Shown piece by piece: positions 116 to 64,000 of a stretch of DNA of 64,000 bases; the first letter of the stretch is position 1; every line of letters begins with the position of its first letter. The DNA is from Salpingoeca rosetta. Its lineage: Eukaryota > Protista > Choanoflagellata. The notes under the pieces are model-generated. The model worked only from the letters and a program-made list of their open reading frames with translations, did no database searches and had not been told where the DNA came from. The position numbers were made by a program, and so were the translations under genes. The DNA lies in assembly GCA_033442325.1 (NCBI GenBank), contig JAWQFM010000010.1:625382-689381 (forward strand), written 5' to 3'.

Positions 116-151
<36 letters not shown>

Positions 152-410
152 GGTGGGAGGGGTGGGCCGGGAAGGATGGATAGGGGGGTGCTTGGTGTGC
201 TTGGTGTGTGCTTGCTATGATGCTTGGTGTGTGCTTGCTATGATGCTTGGTGTGGCTCGTGGGTGGTGTTGTTCATTTCACATCATCAGTTGGATGTGTG
301 AGGAAAAAAGAAGAATCTGCCACTGGCTGGCCATCACATGCAAGAGAGGATGGGCAGGTCGGGAATCATAAAACCAACTTGTAGCCCCACAAACATAAGC
401 AAGAAGAGCA

Positions 411-483
411 GGGTCTGTGGCCAAGCTGGTAAGGCGTTGGTCTCGTAAACCAAAGATCGAGGGTTCAAATCCCTCCAGGCCCT
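411..483 (+). tRNA. tRNA-Thr (anticodon CGT)
   Basis: 73-nt cloverleaf: acceptor GGGTCTG/CAGGCCC, D-arm GCC..GGC, anticodon stem TTGGT/ACCAA with loop CTCGTAA (CGT at 444-446), T-arm GAGGG-TTCAAAT-CCCTC, discriminator T, oligo-T terminator ~14 nt downstream. Confidence 0.95.
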
Positions 484-2385
484 TTGTTCTCTTTCCTTTT
501 TGCCTCTCCCAGGCCCCATCTCTCTCTCCCCTTCTCTCCCTTCTCTCTCTCTCTCTCCCTCTCTCGTAAACCAAAGATCGAGGGTTCAAATCCCTCCAGG
601 CCCTTGGTTCTCTTTCCTTTTTGCCTCTCCCAGGAGAGGCCATCCTTTGCGCTCTCCATCCCTTCTCTCTCTCCATCCCTCTCTCTCCCTCTCTCGTAAA
701 CCAAAGATCGAGGGTTCAAATCCCTCCAGGCCCTTGGTTCTCTTTCCTTTTTGCCTCTCCCAGGAGAGGCCATCCTTTGCGCTCTCCATCCCTTCTCTCT
801 CTCCATCCCTCCCTCTCTCGTAAACCAAAGATCGAGGGTTCAAATCCCTCCAGGCCCTTGGTTCTCTTTCCTTTTTGCCTCTCCCAGGAGAGGCCATCCT
901 TTGCGCTCTCCATCCCTTCTCTCTCTCCATCCCTCCCTCTCTCGTAAACCAAAGATCGAGGGTTCAAATCCCTCCAGGCCCTTGGTTCTCTTTCCTTTTT
1001 GCCTCTCCCAGGAGAGGCCATCCTTTGCGCTCTCCATCCCTTCTCTCTCTCCATCCCTCTCTCTCCCTCTCTCGTAAACCAAAGATCGAGGGTTCAAATC
1101 CCTCCAGGCCCTTGGTTCTCTTTCCTTTTTGCCTCTCCCAGGCCTCATCTCTCTCTCTCTCTCTCTCTCTCCCCTTCTCTCCCCCTCTCTCTCTCCCTCT
1201 CTCGTAAACCAAAGATCGAGGGTTCAAATCCCTCCAGGCCCTTTGTTCTCTTTCCTTTTTGCCTCTCCCAGGCCAACCTTTGCCTCTCCCAGCCCATCCC
1301 TTTGCTCTCTCCCTTCTCTCCATCCCTTCTCTCTCCCCTTCTCTCCCTTCTCTCGTAAACCAAAGATCGAGGGTTCAAATCCCTCCAGGCCCTTTGTTCT
1401 CTTTCCTTTTTGCTCCCTCTCTCCATCCTTTGCTCTCTCCCTTCTCTCCATCCCTTCTCTCTCCCCTTCTCTCCCTTCTCTCGTAAACCAAAGATCGAGG
1501 GTTCAAATCCCTCCAGGCGCTTGGTCTCTTTCCTTTTGGCCTCTCCCAGGCCCCATCTCTCTCTCCTCGTTCTCTCCTTCTCTCTCTCTCTCTCCCTCCT
1601 CTGTAAGCAAAGGACAGAGGGATCAAATCCCTCAAATCCCTCCAGGCCCTTGGTTCTCTTTCCTTTTTGCTCCCTCTCTCCATCCTTTGCTCTCTCCCTT
1701 CTCTCCATCCCTTCTCTCTCCCCTTCTCTCCCTTCTCTCGTAAACCAAAGATCGAGGGTTCAAATCCCTCCAGGCCCTTTGTTCTCTTTCCTTTTTGCTC
1801 CCTCTCTCCATCCCTTCTCTCTCTCCTTCTCTCCCTTCTCTCTCCCCTTCTCTCTCCCTCTCTCGTAAACCAAAGATCGAGGGTTCAAATCCCTCCAGGC
1901 CCTTGGTTCTCTTTCCTTTTTGCCTCTCCCAGGCCCCATCTCTCTCTCCCCTTCTCTCCCTTCTCTCTCTCTCTCTCTCCCTCTCTCGTAAACCAAAGAT
2001 CGAGGGTTCAAATCCCTCCAGGCCCTTGGTTCTCTTTCCTTTTTGCCTCTCCCAGGCCCCATCTCTCTCTCCCCTTCTCTCCCTTCTCTCTATCCCTCTC
2101 CATCCCTCTCTCGTAAACCAAAGATCGAGGGTTCAAATCCCTCCAGGCCCTTGGTTCTCTTTCCTTTTTGCCTCTCCCAGGCCCCATCTCTCTCTCCCCT
2201 TCTCTCCCTTCTCTCTCTCTCTCCATCCCTCTCTCGCAAACCAAAGATCGAGGGTTCAAATCCCTCCAGGCCCTTTGTTCTCTTTCCTTTTTGCCTCTCC
2301 CAGGCCATCCTTTGCTCTCCCTCCCTTCTCTCCCTTCTCTCCCCCTCTCTCGTACTTGGTTCTCTTTCCTTTTTGCTCCTTTGTC
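484..2385 (+). repeat. Tandem array of tRNA-Thr 3'-halves (~120-150 bp units, 14 copies including one degenerate, plus a core-deleted terminal remnant)
   Basis: CTCGTAAACCAAAGATCGAGGGTTCAAATCCCTCCAGGCCC recurs at ~564, 694, 818, 942, 1072, 1202, 1353, 1481, 1601 (degenerate), 1738, 1863, 1986, 2111 and 2234. Each copy is followed by a trailer with oligo-T and a CT-rich spacer. Confidence 0.95.
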
Positions 2386-2866
2386 TTGAACGGTGTGTTG
2401 CACGGTGTGTTGTGTTGGTTGCTTTTGCGTTGTGGCTTTGTACTGCGTGCCTGCGGTGGTGACCTCGTTGCCTGCAAGCAAGCACGCACGCAAAACGGCC
2501 ATCCACAGCGGCACATGGAGACTTAGAGAGGACACGCATTTATTGCCTTCAAACCATGCAGGTACATCACCAACACACACGCGCACGCGCACACACGCAC
2601 ACACGCACGCGCACGCGCACACACACGCACACACGCACGCGCACGCGCACACACACGCACACACACACACGCACACACACACACACACACACGCACGCAC
2701 GCACACGCACACACACACACACACACACAGATCACTTTGCAAATTGAAAGCAGAGAACAGAGGGGGTAAGGAGTAAGTCGACTGAGCACCAGCAGACTGA
2801 ACCAACAGGGGAACCGAGAAGCGATAGGTAGTGGCTCTGCAACCCTTGCACCCGAGGGAGCTGCAA

Positions 2867-3343
2867 TCACGCCACCGTACTGTCCAGTGTGCACTTGTTT
2901 GCCTCTCGTACCAGCTTCACTGCGTGCCCGACCTTCACGCCGGCATTCTTCAGCATGTCCTTGGTCAGGTCGTTATCCTGCACAGAGGCCACCAGCACCT
3001 CAAGGGAGTCGATGCCATGCTCCAACAGCGCCGACTCGACGTGCGGCAGCAGCGAGTGCTGGTCGAGCCAGTGCACCAGCTCAGGCTCAAAGGGTGACAA
3101 GGAGGAGAAAGAAGAAAAGGCAGTCGCGGGCGGTGGGGTGACGGAGCTTGGAGAAGAAAACGACAACGAGAAGAACGACTGCTGACGCGAATGGTCAATA
3201 ATGGGTGGAGTGCAACACAGCGTGAGCGATAAGCAGCATAGGAGACGAAAAGACGTGCATTAACACCCACATTCACCCACCCACACCCACACCCACACCC
3301 ACACCCACACCCACACCCACACCCACACCCACACCCACACCCA

Positions 3344-3425
<82 letters not shown>

Positions 3426-6400
3426 AACACAAACACAAACACATGGTCACAAGTCCCCCCCCCCCACACACACAAAAACAAACGCGCTTACCTGCGTGGA
3501 TCGACGTGCAGACCCTGGTCCCTGCGCTGCGTGCTCGTCGCTTCTCGCAGAGACAACGACTTGGCGCACTTTCTCTTCAATGTCGCGCAGCTGCGACGTG
3601 CGGTCCTCAGTGGCATCCAGTGCAACGACGGCGTCAATGTCGAACAACGACGCCACCACTTGGCGCACGGTCGTGTGCTGCTGTGGTGGGGGCAGGTGTA
3701 GAACATGCGAAAAGTACTGGTCCAATGCTGCCGCCGTCTCCTTGCTCACAACATCGGGCAGCGACTCGGCCAGCCGTTTCATGGGCTCAAGTGAGTCATA
3801 CTTGCTTGCCTCTACCCTGCTCATGTTGCTGCTGATCTTCATATCGTGCCACGCGCTGCCCACCATCACAGGCACGACGCGGCGGAGGCGGATCAGTTCG
3901 TGGTTGAGCTCGACCTCACCCAGCGCCAGCATCGTCATCCACTCCAGCAGCACGTTGTCGCAGTAGTCTGCTTCCTGCAGCTGCGTCATCTGCATGATGG
4001 TGGCAGCAGAGACAATGGGGCAGGCCACCAGGCTCAGCCCTATCGCCGTCATGAACGACAGTTTGAAGTTGAGGCCCGTCTCCAGGTTGTTCGCGTCCAG
4101 GAACGCAACCAGGTTATGCTGTTCCAAGCGCGGGTGTAGCGCTATCACCAGCCCGCTGTTCGCCCGCTGCCTATGGTGGTGTGTGTAGGTGGAGGGGGAA
4201 GAAGGGGGGGGGGAAGTGAGGTGAAATGTTGTGCTGCAGCAGTAGTGGGTGGAAGTGACCGACAGACAGACAGACAAATAGATAGACACGCACACAGACA
4301 CGCACACAGACACGCACACACATGCACACACACAGACACGCGCACACACACGCACACACACTCATACACACACACACAAACCTCACCTGTAGCTGATGAA
4401 GACGTCGTACTTGTCCTGCAGGCCGAGAACGGGCGAGAGAGAGCCGTACTTGGTGACCAGGTCATCGGGCGACAACAGCTGCTCGTCCACCCACATGTCC
4501 TGCTTGCTCTTGTGGTGGTGCAGCACATCCTCAAAGAACAGCAGCGTCTTGTCGTCAAATGGCAGCAGGAGGCTGCTCTTTAGCTCGGGGTAGCGCTCTC
4601 TTATGGCCTCGCTGATCATGGTGTGCAGCATGTGCAGCATGGCGCGTGGCTGTGCACTCGTAATCTTCATCTTGATGCCGCCAACAGCCGGCACAAGCCG
4701 CAGCTCCAGCTTGGTCGACTCCATGAAGCAGACGGCGTGGGTGCGGCTCAGCTTGGGCGCCTGAGATGCGCCGTGCTGTGCATGCGCCATAACATGAGCC
4801 AGCACAACGGTGAAGAGGCCCTCTGGCAGGAACGACGCGTGCTGTGCATTTTCAACTTGCACGCTCGCACTTCGCTTGAACTGCTTCAGACTGAAGGTGA
4901 CGTAGGCTGTCTTCTCCTCATAACCAACGTATGGGTTGACCTGCTGTGCTGCCGTCGTGCTAAGCGACACGGATGCCATCTCGCTGTTGTTGTGGCGAAT
5001 CGTCATCGGCAGGATGGCAGGGACCAGGTACTGCTGGTGCCCGGGACTGCTGCCCTTGCTGCCCTTGGCTGTAGCATTTTCACCGTGGCCAGAGTTGGTG
5101 CGTGCGAGTGCTCTGCGGCTGTCCACCAGCTTGGGTGGGGAGTACTCAACACACAGCCCGTACTGCATCATGAGGCGCAGGAACGGCATTATCAAGTTGC
5201 TGTCCACGTCCCTCCACAGCACATCCAGCAGGCGGCGATGCAGGATACCGCGGTCAAGGAGGTCGTCCCACAGCTGCGCGCCAACGGCCCTCGCCTCGCC
5301 ATCCCGCGCATCGTAGTGCAGGTCAAAGTTGCGGATGACGCGCGTCATCGTGTCCACCGCCCACTGCGGACTCAGGATCACACAATCATCCATGCCTGGC
5401 ACGCTGTCGTAGTACAGCACCATCGAGTACAGGTGCAGGAACTGAAGGCAGGCCCTCGTCTCGTCACGCGTGCGCAGCCCACACGTGCGCGCAATATCCA
5501 CCACCTCATCAAACGTGAGCAGCGGTCGATTGTCGTCGCGGGCGATGGTATGGAGCTTGTCGTAGAGGTGGAGGTACGGCACGGCCACCTCCTGGCTTAC
5601 GTACTCCTGCGCCAGTGCTGTGGAGGAGATAGTCTGGCGCAGGTCCTGGATCATGGGGTCGTTGATGGACTTGGTGTTGTCGACGGGCCAGAACCACAAG
5701 CCGTGCTTGTCGTTGTGAATGACGCCAGGGAAAGCGGGGTTGTGGCGCAGGCGGCTGTACAGTTCGCGTGAGATCTGCTCATGCTGCTTCCGCTGACTGA
5801 CCACATCAGCGAAGGTGCCGACGATGAGGACGGGTGCGCCTTTTGCATGGAGGTGGAGGGAGGAGAGCCAATGCTCCATAAACTCCCACGTCTCAGCTCG
5901 GTTGCTCTCATCTTGGTGCAGCAGGTCCTCCATGGAGAACACCAGCAGGTACACCGCGTACCTGGTGTGTGTGTGTGTGCGGTGATGAAGGGAGAGGTGA
6001 ATGGAGGAGAGGTGGTGGAGGGACTGCAAGCAGGCAAACACGCACACACACATATACACGCACACATACATACATACAGATACACAGACACACAATGCAC
6101 GCAGACACACGCACACACACTCAAACACACAGACACACACGCACACATACACGCACACAACCTGAACTCACTCTGTGAGGAAGAAAGGGTGGAAGATGTA
6201 GAAGGTGGACTGACCGCCCAGGTCAAAGATCTTGAAAGTGACCCTGGTGTTGCCCTGGCCCATGACGGCTTCCACGTTGAACTCTTTGATCGCCTTCTCC
6301 ATTTCCTTCGCAGTCATGCCGGTCGTGGCGGTGGTGCTGTTCTCGTGAGTACCAGCATCATTCTGGTGGCAAGGATCGGGGTTGGCCTGCTTCTTGGGCG

Positions 6401-6716
6401 CAGGTGCTGGGGCATGAGACGTATCCTTGGGCCTTGGGACGGTCGATGTTGACGTGTGGGTTGATGGCCGTGGCCGCGTCTCCATTGACTGCTGTGACTG
6501 CTCCTTCTTCGACTTTGAACCCGTCGCCTTTGGTGCCTTCTCGGCTTCCTGTTGCCGCTGTTGGTGTTGGTGTTGGGCGATGCGGCTCTCGAGGTCCATT
6601 TTCGCCGTCATCATCGCCTGCTTCATCTCCCAATCCACGCCTGATTCCTGCGCCAGCGCCGTTCCACAGAGACTGCGCATCAGCTCCGAGATCTCCGCAT
6701 TCAGCTCCTGCAAAGG

Positions 6717-6761
<45 letters not shown>

Positions 6762-9700
6762 TGTGTGTGTAACGCTTGTGCGAGGGGATGATCGTGTCAA
6801 CCACCACCTCTCTTCACACCCATGCGTCGCACACATCACATGCTCGCACCAGACAAGGGTACACACCTGCCAGTCGTGAACGTCCATTGATTCGACAATG
6901 ACGGCGAGGTCGGTTGAGGCGGCGCCAAGGGTGGAGTGCTCATGCTTGTTGAACATGTGACCCATGAGCGAGTGGAACGTGCTGGTCTTCCCGGCGCGCC
7001 CCTGACCAATGAAGATGAGTTTGGCCCTGCCCGCCATGGTCGCGTTGAAGCGTGCTATGACCTCCCGCATGCGCTGCTGGAGACGCTTCCTGCGCGCCTG
7101 CTCGGGCTGCTGCTGATGGTGGTGCTGGTGATGGTTGTGTGAGACAACATGATTATGCTTGATACGAGACCACGGAGAGCGTGATGAAGGAATGGCATGG
7201 GTGACGTGATGCATTTGCTTGTGCGTTGCTGGCAAGCACTTGTCAAATCACTCACGTCTTGCGCTGTTTGTTCTTCTTGCTTCGGTCCGGCGGCAGGAGT
7301 GGGCGCAGGTGGCTCTTGTTTTGGCTGCTGTTGCTGTTGTGGTTGCTCCAAAGGCTTGCCGCCTGGCTTCAGCCCTTGGATGCTGGTGATGGCAGTATGA
7401 CCGCTGGCCTGTGCCACATCATAGGGCCTCTCTCCCTGCGTGTGTTGCAAAGGTAAAACGCATGAGTTGAGGAAGGAGGGAAGCAGGGAGAGGGGGAGGA
7501 CACAGCACAAGCAATTATGGTAGTTCGTTAACGCCGGCCAGATCGTGAACGTCCATTGATTCGACAATGACGGCGAGGTCGGTAGAGGTGGCACCAAAGG
7601 TGGAGTGCTCGTGCTTGTTGAAGCTACGGCCCATGAGCGATTTAAAGGTGGAAGTCTTGCCGGTGCGCCCCTGGCCAATGAAGGTGAGCTTGGCCCTGCC
7701 CGCCATGGTGGCGATGAAGCGCGCAATGATCTCTCGCATGCGCTGCCGAAGGTGCTCCTTGCGCACCCGATCAGGCTGGTGGAGGCAGAAAAAGCAATGG
7801 TGACATGGTGGCGTGAGTGGGTGAGCGACATTGTGTTGGGAAACAGAGCATGAAGAGTATGATTGACATGGGTGGTGTGATGCGCATGGGCTCACGTTGC
7901 TTGCATGCAAGCACGATCGCCGCCACTTACGTCTTGTACAGCTTCTTCTTGCTTCTTCTGGCGTTGCCGCTGCTGTTGCTGCTGCTTGCTGCCGGCTTGA
8001 GCCCGTCAATGCTGGTGATGGCGGTGTGCCCGCTGGCTGTCGCCACATCATAGGGTGTCTCTCCCTGGGCATGTTTGAAGTGGAAAGCGAGAGGCTTGAG
8101 TTGCCAACGGAGAGGACGAGGAAGAGAACAGACTGAGAGAGAAGACAACGCAACGCAAGGAAGCAGTGCCCACACCGTCGACATCAGCAAACGAAGCGGA
8201 TCACCTTGTTGTTCTTGATGAAAATGTTCCCGCCCTTCTTAAAGAGCAGCCTCGCGATGGTGGGCTGGTTGTGCCTGCAGGCAACGTGCAGCAACGTATT
8301 GCCCTGTTTTGGGCGAGTGCATGAAATGGGGCAGGGTCGCGTGGTGAGAATCCCTGTAAATGAACACGCCAGGCATGAAAAGCGGAACCCCTGAACCCAG
8401 TGCCTCGACTTACAAGCACACACTGCACACACCTCTTCATCTTGCTGGTTCATGTCTGTGTGGCCTTGGTTGATGAAGGAGCTGACAGCTCGAGCGTCAC
8501 CACTCTTACAGGCGGTGAACAGTTGCTGCTGCTGTTGCTTCTTCTCCTCGCGGGCTGTGAAGAAGGCTGCCTTGCCCTCGCCATCCTCACCCCTTCAATC
8601 ACACACAAGATGAGACACTGTCACCGAAAGAGCAAAGCAACGAGCGAAATGTGGCCAGAGGGAGCGAGCGCAGACAGCAACGAGTTGGAATGGAAAGTAG
8701 TGAGTTGACTGACCAATCGCCTGTGCCGAGCGCTCGATTGATGGGCAGTGCAGTACCAAAAGCGCGAGCGGTGGCAGTGGAGTTTTTGTGAAGCCTGAAC
8801 AAGGAGGTGTGATGTGACATGGATGTGTTTGACAAAGGAGAAATACGGTCAGGGAATCGATGGTTGTGAACGTGTGCAAGCAATCAGGGAACAACAAGTG
8901 CTATGGTCCGTGCAGAGAGTGGTGATTGGTCACACGCATCCACAGCAATGAGAGTTGTTCGTGAGGGCTCTGCACCACAATCGACGTACCAGAGGTTTTT
9001 CAGCGTGCGGTTCTGGTCCATGGCAGCTCCCAGCGCGGTGCCACCAACAGGGGTGATGGAGTTGTTGAACAGGCTGCAAGTGGCCAGCAGGTATGATGGT
9101 CGAGGATAGAAAGTGGAGAAGAGCAACGATCGTCAGCGTCAAGGGGCAGGGTCACTTGGTGGCACTCATGACACTGTGGAAGGTGGCAGGGTTCTGGCAA
9201 ACCAGGCACACAGCACACAGCAAGGGACATCATGCATGGATGGCAGTGCGTCGATTTTGACACCGTGAATACAGCAACAAGGCCGCAAGGTCGTCAAGAG
9301 GGGCATCCACTAACACAAGCGTTTCGAGGGTGGAGTTATCCTTCAACACCTCAGCCAACGCCACGGCGCCCACATCGCTGATATGATTGTTGATCAAGCT
9401 GTCAGCCCAAAGAGAGGATGATAAGGGGATGGTAGTGCGCATGGTGAGAGGGAGTGGTGAGTGTGACAAACGCAGTGTGCAAGCAGCTGCAAAGTCTGCG
9501 GGAGAAGGGGAGGGTTCACACCGCCATGCGAGCACGCGTGCCGGCAGAGGGTGGTGTTCCATGTAGCTGTTCTTCATACCCAAGTCCCGTGAGGGTCGTG
9601 TGGTGCTTCAGCATTTCCGCCAACGCCACGACGCCCTGGTCCCTGATGGAGTTGTCGTGCAGGCTGAAAATAGGCAATCACCCGGGGGGGGGGATCTCAC

Positions 9701-9995
9701 CCAAAGTGTACAAGAAGAGACGTTTGAGTGTGGGGGAGGAGACGGGGCAGCATGCAACAGCAGCAACCAACGCAGTCAGCCATGCATGTCACACACGACG
9801 TAGGTCCACGTCACCACGTACACGAGCGTGTTGAGGCAGGTGTTGTCCTTGAGTGCCTCGGCCACCGCACGCGCCCCCCTGTCGCCGAGGCCAGCATTAT
9901 GCAGGCTGAAGTCACACGAGGAAATGAGAGGAAAGACATGAGAATGGAAGTCACAACCTGAGCGAACACGCTCATGGTGGCTGGTTTGGGTGATC

Positions 9996-10082
<87 letters not shown>

Positions 10083-10363
10083 ACCTCCGGGCCAGAAAGA
10101 TACACCCCAAGCTCACAGAAACAAGGACAAACAAGCAAAGAGGACAAGCCAAGCAAGCAAACAGGTGAATGTCCTTGTTCCCTTTCTCCAACAAATGCGT
10201 GCATGCTCCAACCTATCGTTTGGCTGCTTTGCACTCACCTCACAGCGTCCCCACATGTGTTGTTGGCGACGGCCCTGATCTTGTCCTTCACCTTATCTTT
10301 TAGCTTTGTCTGTGCCAGCAAGGCCTCCACCTCCTCCCTCGCCCTCTTCTCTCCGCCGGACAT
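2867..10363 (-). CDS. Multi-exon ROCO protein: RI-like LRRs, ankyrin repeats, ROC GTPase, COR, TIR, SAM
   Basis: ATG at 10363 (MSGGEKRAREEV..IRAVANNTCGDAV). LRR exons such as LHNAGLGDRGARAVAEALKDNTCL. Ankyrin GNTLLHVACRHNQPTIARLL. P-loop GQGRAGKT, G3 FDLGGQ, G4-like VLIVGTFAD. COR region VILSPQWAVD. TIR YDVFISYR...AFLD...DNVLLEW. SAM-like LVHWLDQHSL...GVKVGHAVKL, stop at 2867. Confidence 0.85.
3263..3440. repeat. Intronic (CACACC)n and (CA)n microsatellite
   Basis: Direct reading. Confidence 0.9.
7515..8070 (-). pseudogene. Degenerate or alternative duplicate of the last-ankyrin exon and ROC P-loop exon inside the ROCO gene
   Basis: GETPYDVATASGHTAITSIDGLKP and GRAKLTFIGQGRTGKTSTF..VESMDVHD duplicate ~6866-7440. 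This copy reads GATCTGGCCGGC where the other reads GACTGGCAG|GT, so the donor is lost and the frame runs into a stop at 7515. Confidence 0.6.
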
Positions 10364-10779
10364 GGCTGCTGTTGCTGCAAAGTCGTTGGGTGCAGGACGC
10401 GGATTCTTCTCTTCCCTTTGCCTTGCTCTTTGTGTGGCCTACCCTGTCTTCTCTTGTCTGCTCTCCCCTGTGTGGCTCTGCTCTGCGCTTAATCTTGGGA
10501 CTGGGTGCTGCGACTGGTGTGGCGAAGGATGGATGGAACTGGAACGGACGCGACGCACTAGCACTTGAGTGAAGACTTGAAGTACTTGTTCTTGATGTGT
10601 GAGTACTGTCACCCCACACGCTGATTCCGCAGATTTGCTTGCTTGCTTGTTGCTTGCTTTCTTGGGGCGTTTTCACGCGAGAAGTACATGAAGGCTTCAG
10701 CGACGCATCCAGCAGTAGAGCGGGACATGCTTTCCTCTTTGTTGTGCATTTCCCAGCAGGAGAGGGAAGGGAGAGAGGC

Positions 10780-11555
10780 AAAGGATGGCCTGGGAGAGGC
10801 AAAAGGAAAGAGAACCAAAGGGCCTGGAGGGATTTGAACCCTCGATCTTTGGTTTACGAGAGAGGCATGGAGAGAGAGAGAGAAGAGAGAGAAAGGGGAG
10901 AGAGAGATTGGTCCTGGGAGAGGCAAAAAAGAAAAGAGAACCAAAGGGCCTGGAGGGATTTGATCTCCTCGATCTTTGGTTTACGAGAGAGGAATGGAGA
11001 GGGATAGAGAGAAGGGAGAGAAGGGGAGAGAGAGATGGGGCCTGGGAGAGGCAAAAAGGAAAGAGAACCAAGGGCCTGGAGGGATTTGAACCCTCGATCT
11101 TTGGTTTACGAGAGAGGGAGAGAGAGAGAGAGAGAAGGGAGAGAAGGGGAGAGAGAGATGGGGCCTGGGAGAGGCAAAAAGGAAAGAGAACCAAGGGCCT
11201 GGAGGGATTTGAACCCTCGATCTTTGGTTTACGAGAGAGGGAGAGGGAAGGGGAGAGCGCAAAGGATGGCCTCTCCTGGGAGAGGCAAAAAGGAAAGAGA
11301 ACCAAGGGCCTGGAGGGATTTGAACCCTCGATCTTTGGTTTACGAGAGAGGGAGAGAGAGGGATGGAGAGAGAGAAGGGATGGAGAGCGCAAAGGATGGC
11401 CTCTCCTGGGAGAGGCAAAAAGGAAAGAGAACCAAGGGCCTGGAGGGATTTGAACCCTCGATCTTTGGTTTACGAGAGAGGGAGAGAGAGAGAGAGAAGG
11501 GAGAGAAGGGGAGAGAGAGATGGGGCCTGGGAGAGGCAAAAAGGAAAGAGAACAA
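10780..11555 (-). repeat. Tandem array of tRNA-Thr 3'-halves (6 copies), inverted relative to the left array
   Basis: GGGCCTGGAGGGATTTGAACCCTCGATCTTTGGTTTACGAG at ~10820, 10946 (variant), 11072, 11195, 11306 and 11436, separated by GA-rich spacers. Confidence 0.95.
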
Positions 11556-11628
11556 AGGGCCTGGAGGGATTTGAACCCTCGATCTTTGGTTTACGAGACC
11601 AACGCCTTACCAGCTTGGCCACAGACCC
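11556..11628 (-). tRNA. tRNA-Thr (anticodon CGT), identical to 411-483
   Basis: Exact reverse complement of the 411-483 cloverleaf. Confidence 0.95.
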
Positions 11629-11887
11629 TGCTCTTCTTGCTTATGTTTGTGGGGCTACAAGTTGGTTTTATGATTCCCGACCTGCCCATCCTCTCTTGCA
11701 TGTGATGGCCAGCCAGTGGCAGATTCTTCTTTTTTCCTCACACATCCAACTGATGATGTGAAATGAACAACACCACCCACGAGCCACACCAAGCATCATA
11801 GCAAGCACACACCAAGCATCATAGCAAGCACACACCAAGCACACCAAGCACCCCCCTATCCATCCTTCCCGGCCCACCCCTCCCACC

Positions 11888-11956
<69 letters not shown>

Positions 11957-12025
11957 CACACGCACAGACACACACACACACACACAGAACACACGCACAC
12001 AAACAACAAACACAGCAGCCCAGCC

Positions 12026-13582
12026 ATGAGAGGGAGGACGCAGCCCATGAAGCTGATTGCCGGCCGCCCCTTGCGCGGGCCGGGCCGCGTCGCCTCCGCG
12101 GCTCGCGCCGCAGAGGTCGGCTGCCAGCACCAGATGGACAAGCTCTTTGACTGCTGGAAGCGAAACGACTTTGACGACACACAGTGCTCCAAGCTCATCC
12201 ACGCATACATGCGCTGCCTCTCCCAACAGGTGCGGTGTGCTTTGTGGCTGGGGTGTGATGGGTTGAGCGTTGTTTGGTGCATGGTGCATGTGTGCTGGTT
12301 TGTGGGTGGTTTGTGGGTGGTGGCTGTATTCTGCGTGTTTGTGTGCTGTTTGTGTGCTGTTTGTGTGCTGTTTGTGTGCTGTTTGTGTGCTGTTGTGTAG
12401 CGGTGGTGCGTGGTGTACTGCGCGACAAGCGCACCACACACACACACACACATCATCATCATCATCATCNNNNNNNNNNNNNNNNNNNNNNNNNNNNNNN
12501 NNNNNNNNNNNNNNNNNNNNNNNNNNNNNNNNNNNNNNNNNNNNNNNNNNNNNNNNNNNNNNNNNNNNNNNNNNNNNNNNNNNNNNNNNNNNNNNNNNNN
12601 NNNNNNNNNNNNNNNNNNNNNNNNNNNNNNNNNNNNNNNNNNNNNNNNNNNNNNNNNNNNNNNNNNNNNNNNNNNNNNNNNNNNNNNNNNNNNNNNNNNN
12701 NNNNNNNNNNNNNNNNNNNNNNNNNNNNNNNNNNNNNNNNNNNNNNNNNNNNNNNNNNNNNNNNNNNNNNNNNNNNNNNNNNNNNNNNNNNNNNNNNNNN
12801 NNNNNNNNNNNNNNNNNNNNNNNNNNNNNNNNNNNNNNNNNNNNNNNNNNNNNNNNNNNNNNNNNNNNNNNNNNNNNNNNNNNNNNNNNNNNNNNNNNNN
12901 NNNNNNNNNNNNNNNNNNNNNNNNNNNNNNNNNNNNNNNNNNNNNNNNNNNNNNNNNNNNNNNNNNNNNNNNNNNNNNNNNNNNNNNNNNNNNNNNNNNN
13001 NNNNNNNNNNNNNNNNNNNNNNNNNNNNNNNNNNNNNNNNNNNNNNNNNNNNNNNNNNNNNNNNNNNNNNNNNNNNNNNNNNNNNNNNNNNNNNNNNNNN
13101 NNNNNNNNNNNNNNNNNNNNNNNNNNNNNNNNNNNNNNNNNNNNNNNNNNNNNNNNNNNNNNNNNNNNNNNNNNNNNNNNNNNNNNNNNNNNNNNNNNNN
13201 NNNNNNNNNNNNNNNNNNNNNNNNNNNNNNNNNNNNNNNNNNNNNNNNNNNNNNNNNNNNNNNNNNNNNNNNNNNNNNNCACACACACACATACGCACAC
13301 ACACACACACACATACGCACACACACACACACCATCACACACACAATGCTGCCTTCATCACCTGGGCTGGTTCACTGCCATTCTAACACGTCTCCTCCCC
13401 TTTTGTCTTCCACTCACATCCTTGCCTGCCCTCTTGTCTTACACACACACACACACACGCACACACGCACACACACACACACTGCCACGCTCAATCACCA
13501 AACCAACTTGCAGAGCCGCGTGTCACGTTCCACGCCCTTGGATATGAGATCAGCCATGAAGGAGGTCGACCAGCCGAGATAA
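12026..13582 (+). CDS. CHCHD1: Twin CX9C (CHCH) protein, CHCHD1/mS37-like mitoribosomal protein; intron spans an assembly gap
   Basis: C-QHQMDKLFD-C-WKRNDFDDTQ-C-SKLIHAYMR-C after a basic N-terminus. Donor at ~12230. Likely last exon SRVSRSTPLDMRSAMKEVDQPR* at ~13514-13582. Confidence 0.7.
12470..13279. other. Assembly gap (N run)
   Basis: Ns. Confidence 1.
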
Positions 13583-13950: not shown

Positions 13951-15150
13951 TCACCACTGCACGTGCACCGCTGTGGGCGCTCCATGGGAAATGATGGTTA
14001 GCGGCTGCCGGCCACCAACGCCACCACCACCACCAGAGATGCATATTGCCGCCGCACCAGTGCTCACCCCAACCGAAAACTGCGATGATGCTGCCATGTG
14101 TGCAGCTGCCAAACCCGCGCCATCATCCACGAAAGGCGTTGCCGTTGCCGTTGAAGGTCTCGGCGCAGCTGTTACGCCGTGGGCGCTGGTGTGCGCGTCT
14201 GCAACTGCTCCCGCTGCTGCCCCTGTTGCTGCTGAAGTGTTGTGTGGGCGTGCGATGGTTGCGATGCTGGTGGTTGTGTCATACTGCCATCCACTCGCGG
14301 CCGCGGTCGCGAATATGTCCAGGAACACGTGGAACGGTAGCACGTCGAAGCTGTGTTGTGCATCAAGGAACGTGAGCTGTGCATTCTGCTTGCACCGGCG
14401 CAGTGTCAAATACGGCAGCAGTGACGTGCGCGCGCACTCCTTCTCCAATGCCTCCAGATATCGCCAGATGTTGAGGCGATCCGAGCACACCTCCATACCA
14501 TACAGGCGGTACAGCTGCTCTGCTGGGCCCGTCACGGACTCTGGGATAATCAGGCTTGCCATGATCTCTTTGGCACTGCCACTGCTGGCGTCACGCACTG
14601 CTGTTTCGCTTGATGCAGCTTTCGCTGCCTTTGCTGCTTTGGATGCTGTCGCTGCTGGCTTCTTTGCGTTTGTCTTCTTGTTGCTGCTCTTCGAATCTGC
14701 GGCTGCCTTGGCCTTGGCCTTGGTCTTCTTTCTGGCGCCCGGTTTGCCTTGATACCGTTGCGCTGCGGCCTCGAGGATGGCGGTTGCTGGGGCGTGGGCA
14801 GCCGTTGCCAGCGAGTGCCAATCTGCTGAGCGCAGGGCGCAGTATGGCTGGCGGCGGTTGCGTTTGAACACCAGCAGCGGCAGCACGTCCTCACGCTCCA
14901 AATGGGCGTGCCGCAGAGTCTGGTTCATGCACCGCCAGAACTGGAGCGTCTCTGTGTTTTTGCATTCGATAGCAAAGGGAAACAGGCCCTGCGCCTCTCG
15001 GGAAAGCAGGAGATCTGCGCCGTTTCGGCCCATGGGCGTGCTGATGATGTCACGTGCTGCAACCGCAGGGATGGCGTCCACCAGCATGGCCTGCACCTCG
15101 CTCTGGAACCGTGCGCCCTTTGCCTTGGCGCTGCGAATGTTTCGTGCCAT
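13951..15150 (-). CDS. Intronless PD-(D/E)xK nuclease resembling phage/archaeal Hjc-type Holliday junction resolvases, with a degenerate second domain
   Basis: SAKAKGARFQSEV...STPMGRNGADLLLS...FPFAIECKNTETLQFW...PLLVFKRNRRQPY matches the phage Hjc-like pattern (KG..E/Q, G.DL, IECKN.E.L..W, P.VV.K.N). Single 399-aa ORF. Confidence 0.75.
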   Translation of the reverse strand: MARNIRSAKAKGARFQSEVQAMLVDAIPAVAARDIISTPMGRNGADLLLSREAQGLFPFAIECKNTETLQFWRCMNQTLRHAHLEREDVLPLLVFKRNRRQPYCALRSADWHSLATAAHAPATAILEAAAQRYQGKPGARKKTKAKAKAAADSKSSNKKTNAKKPAATASKAAKAAKAASSETAVRDASSGSAKEIMASLIIPESVTGPAEQLYRLYGMEVCSDRLNIWRYLEALEKECARTSLLPYLTLRRCKQNAQLTFLDAQHSFDVLPFHVFLDIFATAAASGWQYDTTTSIATIARPHNTSAATGAAAGAVADAHTSAHGVTAAPRPSTATATPFVDDGAGLAAAHMAASSQFSVGVSTGAAAICISGGGGGVGGRQPLTIISHGAPTAVHVQW

Positions 15151-24704: not shown

Positions 24705-24804
24705 NNNNNNNNNNNNNNNNNNNNNNNNNNNNNNNNNNNNNNNNNNNNNNNNNNNNNNNNNNNNNNNNNNNNNNNNNNNNNNNNNNNNNNNNNNNNNNNN
24801 NNNN
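24705..24804. other. Assembly gap (N run)
   Basis: Ns. Confidence 1.
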
Positions 24805-33560: not shown

Positions 33561-35461
33561 TCACATATGGCGGTGGTGTCGGCGTGCGATGCGATTTGCC
33601 CGCCTCTCTGCCGCTGCGTGAACACTCTGCTCAGCCACCGCGTGCGACGCGCGGCGCTTCTGGCCTCCAGTGCCATACTGTTGTTGCTGTTGATGTTGAC
33701 GTTGGTGGTGCTCTTCTTGGTGTTGCTGGTGCTGTTTGTGTTGGTCATTTGCTTCGCTTCTTGCTGCGTGGGTGCGGCGTGCCACTCGAAACTGTGCTTG
33801 CCGGCTGCGTTGCCTGTGCGCATGTAGGGTCTGGACACGGTAGGTGTCTGCGTTGTCAACGTGTGCGAGGAGCTCATCCTGGATGGCTGCACCCCTCTCC
33901 GCGACGCAGCGCTGGTATTCGGGGTCGTGGCGGTACGCGGTGAGGTCGTGGGAGGCGGCGTGTGGACGGTGGATGATGGCGACATCCAGCAGAACACGCA
34001 GCTCGTACCCTTGCAGTCTCAGCGCGAGGACATGCAGCACTTTGTTCCACCCAAACCCGGACAGCCGCTCATCGTACCTAGTGATCGTGACCATGATGAT
34101 GTGCGCGTGCGCGTGTGTGTGCGTGTGTGTATAGGATTCGTGATGAGGACAAGACAGACGAGACTGGCTTGGCTGCAGTTGTGGGATGTGGCGTCTGACA
34201 CCGCCATCATGTTGTACACGGACTCACCAACCTCGTACCTGGGAGCAGTGGCTGGGAGGACGAGGTAGGGCTCGTACCCCGGCTGCCAGTCCACCCGGTA
34301 TGGCTGCTGCTGCTGCTGCGTGGACGATAGCCAGCGTGTCATGTTCGTCGGCGCGTGTCCTTTCTCCCATTCTCGACTGCGAAATGCCCGCAACTCGCCC
34401 TCCTTTGCCAACCTTCGCACGCCATCCACCGTATCTGGGACACGGAACGCATACTCGTCCGTCTCCAGCGCTGGCACCACAAACGCTGTTGCACCTGTAT
34501 CACGTGCGTCCCTGTCATTCAACTGCCGGTGCAAGGTTGCACGGATGCGTGCGTAGGCGTTGCTGCTGATGACAAAGTCTGCATCGAGCATCAGCACGTG
34601 CTCTGTTGTCGCCTCATCCCAGGCAACGTTGCGCATGTAGTTGATGGGATATTCTTCCTCGTGGCCACTGCGTCCCCCACCGGCACCACAATTAGGAGTT
34701 GCTGGCGGAGGACGTGTGCCTTCCTCTCTCCTACCTCGACTGCCCGCGTTGATGTCGTACCCCTCGATCCCCTCACCACCATCAGTATCACCAGTATCAC
34801 CATCACCACCACCACCACCATCAGTGTCAGCAACTCTACCACCATCCCCGCCATCGTCATCGTGGATCCATGAGTAGACGATGTGCACACGCATGACATC
34901 CACCACCTTGTCGCGTGCCTGGTCAAGGAACGTGTCAATGGCACGCGCGTCGCTGAACCTGGCGTACACGCTGAGCGATATTGGGCCGTCCCACTGGCTC
35001 ACCAGTTCGAGCAAGGCAGGCAGTCGGTCGGCTGATGTGTGCAGCAGCAACGTCACGTCTTCGTTGTGAGGAACTCGCCTGACCTCTTGCTCCACGCATG
35101 TCACCTGCCTTTGCCCACCGCCGACATCATCACGACCAGTGTCCGCACGAAAGGCAGTGGCACCACGACCAACATCACCTCCATCTCCACCATCACCACC
35201 ACCACCGTCACCACCGGCATCCCCACCATCACGCCTACTGTCGTCGTCGACACCAAGTTGCATTTGTCGCAGATACACCTGTGCGGCTGCTGCCGTGCTG
35301 TGTGCCATCACCAGCGTTGACGAGGCTGCGTCGTTAACCCTCACACACGTCGGGCCTTTGCACGTGCACTTGAACATGCGCCGTCGTGGTTGTACCATCG
35401 CATAGTTGACGTGTGTGATTGGAGCCTGCCCTTTTACAAGTCGCCTGTGGTCTGAAGGGGG

Positions 35462-35532
<71 letters not shown>

Positions 35533-36883
35533 GCTGTTGTTGTTGTTGTTGTTGTTGCTTCTTGACAACAGCACCACCATCCTTCAGTGCCGTGTCTTGG
35601 CTCAAAGCGCCTGTGCTGTTGTGGCACATAAATGGCACAAGGGATGCAGTGGCGCCGTTCGCTTCCACAGCACTTTGGTGCATGCGCATCAGGTGTGGCC
35701 TGAGCGGAATATCTGCCTCTTGCTTCAGCGGCGAGTTCCAGTGCAAGATGGCAGGCTGCCTCGGTGGCGGTAACCAGTACTGTCGCGGGTGCTGGTGGCC
35801 TTGGTAAGCTGGCATGAGGCATGCTGGCGCTGAGGTGTGGTCGTGGAGCTGCAGATTCCATTCGCAGGGCAGCACGCCGCCCAGCTCCCGATGCTCCAGA
35901 AACACCACGTTGAAAACGTCTTGCTCTGCGAGGGCCGTTGTCGCGCGACGAGAAGCAAGCTGTCGCCGCAGCGCCGTCTCCCACAAGTCCCGCCACCCAT
36001 CCTGGCGCATGTGGGCGAGGTGCAGCGCAAGCACGCCCGTGTTCAACCCTCGGCCGACGGCCGGCCAGATCAGGCTACTGGGGATGCCAGGGAGTGTGCC
36101 CAAGTACCAGTCGCTCTGCTGCAGGGCAGCAGCGAAGAGCCGGCGCTGCTGCTGCTGCTGCTGCTGCTGCGTGCTGTCGTCGAGGCTGTGGAGCCGGTCA
36201 CCGGCGTTGTGGTTGTTGTGCATGTTGCCATTGTTGCTGCCATGAGCGGTGTCGCTGGGGAAGAATGCCAGGCGCCAGAGCTGGCCGATGTCTGCGTGCA
36301 CGCTGAGGTCGGTATCCAGGACAATGACGTGGTCCACGTCTGGCAGCGCGCGTTCAAGCACGAGCTTGGCAAACCCGTAGGCGCCGGCAGTGTGGCGGGT
36401 TGGAATCCACGCCACCTCGTCCAACGCTGGCGTGATGTCGCGGAAGGTGCTGGAGACGCAAGGCAGGCGTGCCTGCAAACCGCCCTGAAGAAAACGCTGC
36501 AGGGAGTGGCGGGCTTCCGCGTCACACACAATGTGCAGATGAACACACACTGTCCGGTGCTGGAGAAGCGAGCGGATGGTGATGGAGGCACCACGTGCAG
36601 CGTCCACACCAGCCACAACCATTGCCACGTGCGCATGCACGGCTGGATTCGTGCTCTCGTCACAGCTCCACCTGCTGTCCTGGGCGCTGCCTCCGCTATT
36701 GCCGCCCTTGCTGAAGTTGCGGGGTTGCCGGCTGCGGTGGTGGGTTCTTGTCGTTGGCGCGGGTTCATCACTGATGTGTGGGGCGTGCACCGCGAGTAAG
36801 ACGATGGTGGTGGCCACGCCGCAGATGAACGAAGCAAGTACAAGCACCATTGCCACCTTCCTCCATCTCCTCTTCATGTGCAT
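33561..36883 (-). CDS. LARGE: LARGE-like bifunctional glycosyltransferase (type II TM, GT8 plus GT49), one intron at ~34079-34235
   Basis: N-terminal TM. GT8: VIVLDTDL, WPAVGRGLNTGV, LAEQDVFN, LPCEWNLQL, ILHWNSPLK. GT49: YPINYMRNVA, MLDADF, AFVVPALE, KGHAPTN, WQPGYEPY, YDERLSGFGWNKV. Confidence 0.88.
35462..35557 (-). repeat. (CAA)n coding poly-Gln tract between the GT8 and GT49 domains
   Basis: (TTG)n on the + strand inside the ORF. Confidence 0.9.
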
Positions 36884-37391
36884 GCTACTCAAAGAGAGAG
36901 AGAGAGTGTGTGTGTGTGTGTGTGCGGAAGGGGAAGATGAAGGTGTACGAGAGGAGGTGGGAGCTGGGAAGAGGGAGGTGAGAAGAGGGCTTTTTGCAAT
37001 GCAGCGTGAGCGCTGTTGTCTGTTGTTGATGTGGGCAGCGGGTGTTGGTCGTGTGTGATGTGTTGTGCCGCGATTCCAAACTTCCAGGAGGGACAAAGAA
37101 CAAGGGTTGTTTTCTTGTTTTGCCACACACGCAGAGGTAATTGTGATTTTGCCACATTGAAAATTGGTGGCAAAAAGCACGTGTGGCGCGAATACGCAAG
37201 AAGCACAAGAAGGCAGGTCCTTCTCTTTGCCTTTTTTCTCTGCGTCGAACGCACGTTGTGTCATCATCCACGCCGCGCTGGCATTGTTGTAACTCGCGGG
37301 TGACAGCGACAAGGGCAGTGCGCACCGCCAGTCACATCACACGGCAAACGCATCTCCCTCTCGTTCTTTGCTGAGAACACCGCACGACAAG

Positions 37392-53600: not shown

Positions 53601-64000
<10,400 letters not shown>

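What the first reader, a model, noticed from the sequence alone, without database searches (positions are those of the whole stretch)
119..11952. ROCO immune-like gene enclosed by inverted arms made of tRNA-Thr plus tRNA-half arrays
Seen: two identical tRNA-Thr(CGT) genes point toward each other (411+, 11628-). Each has ~260 bp of identical outer flank and is followed inward by a tandem array of its own 3' half (14 vs 6 copies). The ~8.4 kb between them holds exactly one gene, an LRR-ANK-ROC-COR-TIR-SAM protein, while the genes to the right are mostly housekeeping. Known: foldback transposons have long TIRs with internal tandem repeats of unequal copy number; S. pombe mating-type IR-L/IR-R are inverted repeats with B-boxes bound by TFIIIC that act as chromatin boundaries; inverted repeats allow cassette inversion. 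Inference: this is a discrete module that is (a) a TFIIIC-insulated domain for a variable or toxic receptor gene, (b) an invertible or exchangeable cassette, or (c) a non-autonomous foldback-like vehicle that spreads ROCO genes. I know of no described system with this layout.
Basis: partly seen in the sequence, partly recalled or inferred. Interest (0 to 1): 0.9.

Follow-up and report, generated by a model that had tools for sequence, protein, structure and literature searches.

The report
Inverted tRNA-Thr half-gene arrays around ROCO gene
In the choanoflagellate Salpingoeca rosetta, two identical threonine tRNA genes, each followed by a tandem array of its own 3' half, face each other across one immune-like ROCO gene; the layout is real in the assembly and unusual, but it occurs at this one locus only and looks like a local inverted duplication, not a mobile or family-wide system.

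Summary
Two identical tRNA-Thr(CGT) genes converge at 411-483(+) and 11556-11628(-). A 669-nt stretch is 100% identical between the arms. Each tRNA gene is followed inward by a roughly 125-bp minisatellite of its own 3' half, with 14 units on the left and 6 on the right. The 8.4 kb between the arms holds one annotated gene, PTSG_12139 of Salpingoeca rosetta (LRR-ANK-Roc-COR-TIR-SAM).

The units carry the genomic trailer, a T-run and no CCA, so they arose by DNA duplication. The junction sits at a TCTC microhomology between a CT tract and the anticodon loop. The two arrays are colinear; the left has seven extra units.

Ten of at least 28 paralogous ROCO loci (271 kb) carry no tRNA gene and no array. 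Paralog homology stops inside the gene. This argues against a ROCO-spreading vehicle.

Each half-unit has a B box but no A box, so TFIIIC binding is plausible. However, the B box is no better conserved than the trailer, and nothing here tests chromatin.

The module lies on a 12.5-kb contig with assembly gaps on both sides, in a 454/Sanger draft. Copy numbers and the perfect identity are therefore uncertain.

Best reading: a locus-specific inverted duplication of a tRNA gene plus its minisatellite, with a possible but unproven insulator role.

The parts
119..410 (+). Left outer flank: (GT)15 microsatellite, 2.5 copies of a 23-bp repeat, then about 155 bp upstream of the tRNA gene. Identical to 11629-11920.
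   Evidence: 324/324 identical up to the first core start.
411..483 (+). tRNA-Thr(CGT) gene with an A box at 418 and a B box at 462.
   Evidence: (71.3 bits).
484..2375 (+). Left array of 14 units of 121-151 bp. Each unit holds the tRNA 3' half from the anticodon loop, the genomic trailer with a T run and a CT-rich tail. One unit near 1600 is degenerate. A core-less remnant ends the array at about 2344-2375.
2867..10363 (-). CDS span of PTSG_12139 (1446 aa; isoform variant of 1360 aa), an LRR-ANK-Roc-COR-TIR-SAM protein. It is the only annotated gene between the arms.
10780..11555 (-). Right array of 6 units, with a degenerate one near 10940. It is colinear with left units 1, 2, 10, 11, 12 and 13.
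11556..11628 (-). Second tRNA-Thr(CGT) gene, identical to the first.
11629..11920 (-). Right outer flank, identical to 119-410. It runs into a longer (CA)n tract at 11890-12014. The CHCH-domain gene starts at 12027.
12470..13279 (.). Assembly gap of 810 N, 550 bp outside the right arm. A 1,545-N gap lies immediately left of window position 1.

Best explanation
This is a locus-specific inverted segmental duplication, not a mobile element or a family-wide system.

**Step 1 (shown by the sequence).** A tRNA-Thr(CGT) gene acquired a minisatellite on its 3' side by DNA-level tandem duplication of a segment of about 125 bp. The segment runs from the anticodon loop through the 3' trailer and its T5 terminator into a CT-rich tract. 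The join lies where the CT tract meets the TCTC of the anticodon stem-loop, so slippage or unequal exchange at microhomology is the likely cause.

**Step 2 (inferred).** The block of 292-bp upstream flank, tRNA gene and array, with at least 6 units already present, came to lie in inverted orientation on both sides of one ROCO gene. The outer breakpoints fall in GT/CA microsatellites.

**Step 3 (inferred from the pattern of differences).** The outer 669 nt are kept identical by arm-to-arm gene conversion, or by mixing of reads in the consensus. The inner edge units have drifted. The left array gained seven units, or the right array lost them, by unequal exchange.

**Consequence.** The two full tRNA genes are presumably ordinary working Pol III genes. 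The half-units have a B box and a terminator but no A box, so they are not expected to be transcribed. They may bind TFIIIC as a by-product. The enclosed gene, PTSG_12139, is one of at least 28 dispersed LRR-ANK-Roc-COR-TIR paralogs, and it appears to be enclosed here by the accident of location.
For: - **The units are DNA copies, not retro-copies.** Every unit carries the gene's own trailer and T run and no CCA.
- **The junction is at microhomology.** Units end in a CT tract that reads straight into TCGTAAACC; the gene has GGTCTCGTAAACC.
- **The arms are colinear.** R0=L0, R1=L1, R2 resembles L2, R3=L10, R4 resembles L11 (1 mismatch), R5 resembles L12 (6 mismatches), R6 resembles L13 (13 mismatches). 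L3-L9 are extra. The array therefore existed before the arms separated.
- **Divergence is uneven.** There are 0 differences in 669 nt at the outer end against 6 in 127 at an inner unit, Fisher p = 1.5e-5. This fits conversion or consensus mixing of the outer part.
- **Variation sits in the CT tail.** The 40-nt core and the 32-nt trailer are equally invariant. This is what a young, slippage-prone minisatellite would show.
- **The arms are unique to this locus.** There are 0 tRNA genes and 0 cores in 271 kb around ten paralogs and in the other 52 kb of the window.
- **Paralog homology ends inside the arms**.
- **Both outer ends lie in GT/CA microsatellites**.
- **The array is a 77% pyrimidine strand**, a sequence type prone to slippage.
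Against: - Only one draft assembly could be examined, so neither the second arm nor the copy numbers are independently confirmed.
- No other S. rosetta tRNA locus could be inspected. It is unknown whether 3'-half arrays are common at tRNA genes in this genome, which would change the picture.
- A neutral origin does not explain why the arms bracket exactly one gene so tightly, 517 bp beyond its stop codon and 417 bp before its ATG.
- Gaps in the paralog loci could hide repeats that failed to assemble. Examples are 100 N lying 196 bp upstream of the gene in L008, and 9.4 kb of N lying 572 bp downstream of the gene in L004.
Confidence: 0.55

Rival explanations
1. **B-box arrays as paired TFIIIC boundary elements.** The 20 half-units recruit TFIIIC without Pol III. 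Together with the two active tRNA genes, they insulate or loop out the ROCO-TIR gene from its housekeeping neighbours.
For: - Each half-unit keeps the tRNA's own B box (GGTTCAAATCC) and lacks an A box.
- There are 20 B boxes in 3.4 kb of arms, 0 in the other 52 kb of the window and 1 in 271 kb of paralog loci.
- The right arm lies between the divergent starts of the ROCO gene and the CHCH gene (10363 and 12027). The left arm lies between the ROCO 3' end and the start of an Autophagy_act_C gene.
- There is a precedent. The S. pombe IR-L/IR-R are 2-kb inverted repeats with five B boxes each, bound by TFIIIC, at the edges of a 20-kb domain (PMC7474672).
Against: - None of ten paralogs, which have the same architecture and presumably similar regulatory needs, has anything comparable.
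- The B box is no more conserved than the non-tRNA trailer beside it.
- No chromatin or expression data were available here.
Confidence: 0.2
2. **Assembly artefact, in whole or in part.** The outer part of one arm (flank, tRNA gene and first units), the copy numbers, or the perfect identity result from repeat-induced mis-joining or read mixing in the 454/Sanger hybrid assembly.
For: - The module is one 12.5-kb contig with gaps on both sides.
- Both outer junctions lie in GT/CA microsatellites.
- Reads of about 400-800 nt cannot span the arrays, and the identical stretch (669 nt) is about one read long (PMC4054682).
Against: - The inner units of the right array have private substitutions and join unique sequence at about 10780. 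An inverted second array is therefore certainly present.
- The two arms have different unit orders, not mirror copies.
- The assembly used 4-kb, 10-kb and 40-kb mate pairs and manual review.
Confidence: 0.12
3. **Invertible or exchangeable cassette.** Recombination between the arms flips the 8.4-kb segment, or swaps it with another copy, to vary the receptor gene.
For: - 669 identical inverted bases plus further 91-99% matching array stretches, about 8-10 kb apart, are ample substrate for homologous inversion.
- The uneven arm divergence implies ongoing arm-to-arm exchange.
Against: - The ROCO gene's upstream 417 bp lies inside the segment and would flip with it. The arms are near-symmetrical. 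Inversion therefore gives no evident on/off or alternative-product logic.
- No recombinase lies within the module.
- The closest paralog is only about 85% identical at DNA level and shares no flank, so cassette exchange has no donor.
Confidence: 0.08
4. **Foldback-type non-autonomous transposon** carrying a ROCO gene as cargo.
For: The long inverted arms are built from tandem subrepeats of unequal copy number and enclose cargo. This resembles the layout of Drosophila FB elements (from general knowledge).
Against: - No second copy of the arms appears in 271 kb around ten paralogs or elsewhere in the window.
- Paralog homology ends inside the arms.
- The arm termini contain a working tRNA gene and a unique flank rather than transposon ends.
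- No target-site duplication can be read, because both ends lie in microsatellites.
- MITE-Hunter and MITE Tracker found no MITE families in S. rosetta (PMC6875170).
Confidence: 0.03

Closest known systems
S. pombe mating-type boundaries IR-L/IR-R (TFIIIC-bound B-box inverted repeats)
   Same: Inverted repeats of about 1-2 kb bracket a discrete domain. Each carries several B boxes that lack an A box (PMC7474672).
   Different: - Here the B boxes are unmistakable tandem copies of a neighbouring tRNA gene's 3' half, 14 and 6 rather than 5 and 5.
- A full tRNA gene caps each arm.
- The domain is one 7.5-kb expressed-looking gene, not a 20-kb silent region.
- TFIIIC binding and boundary activity are untested.
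tRNA-gene barriers and insulators (S. pombe centromeric imr tRNA genes, yeast ETC sites, human tDNA insulators; from general knowledge)
   Same: Pol III genes or isolated B boxes sit between differently regulated Pol II genes. In S. pombe centromeres the tRNA genes also lie within inverted repeats.
   Different: Those are whole tRNA genes or single degenerate B boxes. As far as my searches and knowledge go, no tandem 3'-half array has been described (searches found none).
Foldback (FB) transposons
   Same: Long inverted arms are made of tandem subrepeats, the two arms have unequal copy number, and unrelated DNA lies between them.
   Different: This is a single locus. There is no dispersed family, the termini are not transposon-like and no target-site duplication can be read.
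Large genomic palindromes with a unique spacer kept alike by arm-to-arm gene conversion (for example the human Y palindromes; from general knowledge)
   Same: The arm sequence is near-perfectly identical around a unique spacer, and divergence is heterogeneous in a way that suggests conversion.
   Different: The arms here are 1-2 kb and made of a tRNA-derived minisatellite. The genes are in the spacer, not in the arms.
tRNA-linked short tandem repeats in Entamoeba, and tRNA-derived SINEs or satellites (from general knowledge)
   Same: tRNA-related sequence is organised as tandem repeats with variable copy number.
   Different: - Entamoeba units contain whole tRNA genes.
- SINEs are retro-copies with the 5' (A-box) part. 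Here only the 3' half is copied, at DNA level, together with the genomic trailer.

Membership tests
Foldback transposon | Long terminal inverted repeats built of tandem subrepeats | tested here: met
   Arms of about 2.2 kb and 1.1 kb, made of units of about 125 bp.
Foldback transposon | Dispersed multi-copy family in the genome | tested here: not met
   No arm sequence in 271 kb of ten paralog loci or in the other 52 kb of the window. The whole genome was not searchable. No MITEs are reported for this genome (PMC6875170).
Foldback transposon | Target-site duplication at the outer ends | tested here: inconclusive
   Both outer ends lie inside GT/CA microsatellites.
TFIIIC-only boundary element (ETC/COC/IR type) | B-box consensus present without an A box | tested here: met
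   20 half-units have GGTTCAAATCC. An A-box-like motif occurs only in the two full genes.
TFIIIC-only boundary element (ETC/COC/IR type) | TFIIIC occupancy without Pol III | not testable with these tools
   Needs ChIP or CUT&RUN in S. rosetta.
TFIIIC-only boundary element (ETC/COC/IR type) | Barrier or enhancer-blocking activity, with a chromatin transition at the element | not testable with these tools
   No chromatin or deletion data are available.
Functional tRNA gene (the two full copies) | Cloverleaf with anticodon, internal A and B boxes and a downstream T-run terminator | tested here: met
   ARAGORN and Rfam 71.3 bits against a cut-off of 29. A box at 418 and 11621, B box at 462 and 11577, and T5 about 20 nt downstream.
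Cryptic, split or permuted tRNA gene (the half-units) | A matching 5' half or a complete cloverleaf recoverable from the unit | tested here: not met
   No tRNA call by ARAGORN or by Rfam at E up to 0.1 in the arrays. No A box.
Retroposed tRNA-derived element (SINE or tRNA retro-copy) | Copy of the RNA (CCA or poly-A tail, no genomic trailer), including the A-box part | tested here: not met
   The units carry the genomic trailer and T run, no CCA and no 5' half.
ROCO protein (enclosed gene) | Roc GTPase immediately followed by a COR domain | tested here: met
   Roc 62.1 bits and COR-A 62 bits. Matches to LRRK2, LRRK1 and C. tepidum Roco structures.
TIR-domain protein (enclosed gene) | TIR domain above the curated threshold | tested here: inconclusive
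   TIR_2 scores 23.4 bits against a cut-off of 28. The SARM1 TIR matches at E 0.0017. Several paralogs carry precomputed TIR_2/TIR hits.

The most novel reading that the evidence does not exclude
A tRNA gene's 3' half has been amplified into paired, inverted B-box arrays. These act with the two capping tRNA genes as TFIIIC-bound boundary or looping elements, enclosing a single ROCO-TIR receptor gene as an insulated domain. This would be a pre-metazoan Pol III-derived insulator, caught at the stage where its origin from a tRNA gene is still legible.
Probability: 0.15. Interest if true: 0.75.

Novelty: new variant of a known kind. Interest (0 to 1): 0.4.

Why it matters
If the arrays bind TFIIIC, this locus would show how B-box boundary elements can be born from a tRNA gene by simple tandem duplication. 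Such elements are known in fission yeast, and isolated TFIIIC sites are known in yeast and human. [quoted passage not shown]

If it is only a neutral inverted duplication, it is still useful in two ways. It is a clean example of microhomology-driven minisatellite birth inside a Pol III gene. It also marks a likely hotspot for inversion and gene conversion. In that case it has no wider consequence.

Tried and rejected
1. **ROCO-spreading vehicle: rejected.** I fetched ten paralog loci (L001-L005, L007-L011). They have no tRNA gene, no core, no arm similarity and a single isolated B-box-like hit.
2. **Independent assembly of the locus: not available.** The exact-protein look-up of the 1360-aa isoform found nothing. 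The 1446-aa isoform is present only in GCA_000188695.1.
3. **Array-derived ORF used as a protein query to find other arrays in public assemblies:** no hit.
4. **Metagenome scans** for the unit junction and for the tRNA core: 0 matches each.
5. **Half-units as cryptic tRNAs or another known RNA family:** nothing from ARAGORN or Rfam. There is one chance-level SCARNA2 hit inside an intron, 22 bits against a cut-off of 48.
6. **Selection on the B box:** tested by comparing variation in core, trailer and CT tail. Core and trailer are equally invariant, so no specific constraint can be claimed.
7. **Literature searches** for tandem tRNA-half arrays, for choanoflagellate tRNA repeats and for S. rosetta ROCO/TIR genes found no description of this layout.
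8. **A genome-wide survey of S. rosetta was not possible.** No tool here holds the eukaryotic genome apart from protein-anchored loci.


Full report
**Source of the window.** The window is from the choanoflagellate Salpingoeca rosetta, assembly GCA_000188695.1, scaffold GL832963.1.
- The Roc-COR exon (window 4386-5960, minus strand) is 100% identical to a protein annotated as a variant of PTSG_12139.
- The locus fetched for the 1446-aa isoform (L006) matches the window over 20,363 bases without a mismatch, in reverse orientation.
- It is not human sequence. It is not a toxin or pathogen gene.

- ARAGORN finds only two tRNA genes in 64 kb. Both are tRNA-Thr(CGT) and they converge, at 410-484(+) and 11555-11629(-). 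Rfam scores each at 71.3 bits.
- The longest inverted repeat is 119-787 against 11252-11920, 669 nt at 100%. It covers 292 nt upstream of the tRNA gene, the gene itself and about two and a half array units.
- A 40-nt core, running from the anticodon loop to the 3' acceptor end, defines the arrays. In the left arm it recurs 13 times after the gene with at most one mismatch, and there is one more degenerate copy near 1600. In the right arm it recurs five times, and there is one degenerate copy near 10940.
- Tandem Repeats Finder reports period 123-130 arrays at 441-2351 and 10787-11598.
- The core and the B-box consensus occur nowhere else in the window.

**Anatomy of a unit.**
- Each unit holds the tRNA 3' half, starting in the anticodon loop. 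It continues with about 32 nt of the gene's own 3' trailer, including a T5 run, and ends in a CT-rich tail of 50-80 nt.
- The trailer and T run are copied and there is no CCA. The units are therefore copies of DNA, not of mature tRNA or tRNA halves.
- The CT tail reads directly into TCGTAAACC. In the gene, the same bases are preceded by GGTC. The repeat junction thus lies in a TCTC microhomology between the CT tract and the anticodon stem-loop. This points to slippage or unequal exchange as the origin.
- The half-units have the B box (GGTTCAAATCC) and a terminator but no A box. The only A-box-like motifs are in the two full genes.
- Neither ARAGORN nor Rfam sees a tRNA in the half-units.
- The array strand is 77% pyrimidine.

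**Relationship of the two arms.**
- The arrays are colinear. The right units, read inward, match left units 0, 1, 2, 10, 11, 12 and 13. Left units 3-9 have no counterpart.
- A multi-unit array therefore existed before the two arms became separate. One arm then gained or lost seven units.
- Divergence is uneven. There is none in the outer 669 nt. There is none or one mismatch in the middle pairs. R5 against L12 has 6 mismatches plus indels, and R6 against L13 has 13. Outer against inner gives Fisher p = 1.5e-5.
- Two explanations fit. One is arm-to-arm gene conversion of the outer part, as in other genomic palindromes. The other is mixing of reads from both arms in the consensus.
- Variation among units is concentrated in the CT tail. 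The 40-nt core and the 32-nt trailer are equally invariant. There is therefore no sign that the tRNA-derived part, and so the B box, is under special constraint.

**What lies between and around the arms.**
- The 8,429 bp between the arms hold one annotated gene, with CDS at 2867-10363 on the minus strand.
- Pfam finds LRR_6, ankyrin repeats, Roc (62 bits), COR-A (62 bits), COR-B (below cut-off), TIR_2 (23.4 bits, below the 28-bit cut-off) and SAM_2.
- The Roc-COR part matches the LRRK2, LRRK1 and Chlorobium Roco structures. The TIR part weakly matches the SARM1 TIR.
- The gene ends 517 bp from the left array and starts 417 bp from the right array.
- Outside the right arm, a CHCH-domain gene starts at 12027. 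It is followed by a small nuclease gene, a WD40 gene and a Rho-GDI gene.
- Outside the left arm lies an Autophagy_act_C gene, about 1.9 kb away by the scaffold's gap estimate. It is transcribed away from the arm.

**Test of the vehicle idea.**
- S. rosetta has at least 28 paralogs of this gene on many scaffolds. They are 66-92% identical to it in the Roc-COR region.
- I fetched ten of them with 10 kb on each side, 271 kb in total. The set includes the closest ones, PTSG_05418, PTSG_12865, PTSG_10437, PTSG_11700 and PTSG_10661.
- None has a tRNA gene. None has the core, or any BLAST similarity to either arm. Together they contain one isolated B-box-like match (L008:9015).
- DNA similarity between the window locus and the paralogs spans window 2871-10466 at most. 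It never reaches the arms at 2350 or below, or at 10780 or above.
- The arms are therefore a property of this locus, not of the gene family.
- A published survey found LTR elements and DNA transposons but no MITE families in this genome (PMC6875170).
- One caveat applies. Several paralog loci contain gaps close to the gene, and arrays of this kind are exactly what fails to assemble.

**Assembly caveat.**
- The module sits on a single 12,469-bp contig. A 1,545-N gap starts immediately left of window position 1, and an 810-N gap starts 550 bp right of the right arm.
- Both outer ends of the inverted repeat lie in GT/CA microsatellites.
- The genome was assembled from roughly 400-nt 454 reads and Sanger reads with Newbler and Arachne (PMC4054682).
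- No read spans a 2.2-kb array of near-identical 125-bp units. The unit counts of 14 and 6 and the perfect 669-nt identity should be treated as provisional.
- The inner units of the right array have private substitutions and a private junction with unique sequence. A second, inverted array is therefore certainly present.
- No independent assembly was reachable.

**Interpretation.**
- The best-supported account has three steps. A minisatellite was born at a tRNA gene by microhomology. The tRNA gene plus its array was then duplicated locally in inverted orientation. Conversion and unequal exchange between and within the arms followed. I put this at 0.55.
- The insulator reading is reasonable on sequence grounds. 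It has B boxes without A boxes, positions between differently oriented Pol II genes, and the S. pombe IR-L/IR-R precedent of five TFIIIC-bound B boxes per 2-kb inverted repeat (PMC7474672).
- It lacks comparative support, because paralogs manage without such arms and the B box shows no special constraint. No chromatin data were available. I put it at 0.2.
- Homologous inversion between the arms is likely to happen at some rate. As a regulatory switch it has no evident logic, because the gene's upstream region would flip with it. I put it at 0.08.
- A partial assembly artefact gets 0.12 and a foldback transposon 0.03.

**Novelty.**
- I found no description of tandem arrays of a tRNA 3' half, in the literature searches or from memory. 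The nearest known things are listed under Closest known systems.
- I rate this a new variant of a known kind, namely tDNA or B-box-bearing inverted repeats and tRNA-derived tandem repeats.
- Interest is moderate. It is a single locus in a draft assembly with no functional evidence.

Noticed in passing
window 13951-15150 (-): A single-exon 399-aa annotated gene about 2 kb outside the right arm. Its first 120 residues are a phage-type PD-(D/E)XK nuclease: Pfam PDDEXK_15 at 30.3 bits, PHROG 244 'RusA-like Holliday junction resolvase' at E 2.9e-17, and about 40% identity to marine cyanophage and Methanoculleus virus proteins. A D...ExK motif is visible. The C-terminal 280 residues are low-complexity. 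No such gene appears in the gene tables of the ten paralog loci. A junction-resolvase-like gene lying next to a large inverted repeat may be coincidence.
   Followed up: partly
window 6874-7112 vs 7543-7781, and 7365-7471 vs 7994-8100: A tandem duplication of about 650 bp inside the ROCO gene repeats the last ankyrin exon and the Roc P-loop exon, at 84% and 75% identity. The annotated protein follows the downstream copy (6138-7450). The upstream copy (7527-8079) aligns at only about 75%, so it is an unused or alternative exon set.
   Followed up: partly
immediately left of window position 1 (L006:20364-21908) and window 12470-13279: Assembly gaps of 1,545 N and 810 N bracket the 12.5-kb contig that holds the whole module. 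Further gaps lie at 24705-24804 and 61443-61567.
   Followed up: yes
S. rosetta scaffolds (loci L001-L011): At least 28 LRR-ANK-Roc-COR(-TIR) paralogs lie on many scaffolds and are 66-92% identical to the window gene in Roc-COR. Two of them (PTSG_11903 and PTSG_02681) lie about 50 kb apart on GL832960.1. This is a large lineage-specific expansion of an immune-like receptor family.
   Followed up: partly
L008:9015: An isolated B-box-like match (GGTTCGATTCC) about 1 kb upstream of paralog PTSG_12865, beside a (CA)n tract and about 700 bp from a 100-N gap. ARAGORN calls no tRNA there. It is probably chance or a decayed tRNA gene.
   Followed up: partly
window 34019-37312 (-): A 1097-aa uninterrupted ORF whose glycosyltransferase domains (PF01501 and PF13896) resemble animal LARGE1/2 xylosyl- and glucuronyltransferases and a Monosiga brevicollis homologue, at about 30-36% identity over about a third of the ORF.
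   Followed up: no
window 2573-2729, 3263-3443, 4270-4378, 6038-6159, 9998-10080: Long (AC)n-type microsatellites fill most introns of the ROCO gene. GT/CA tracts also mark both outer ends of the inverted repeat.
   Followed up: no
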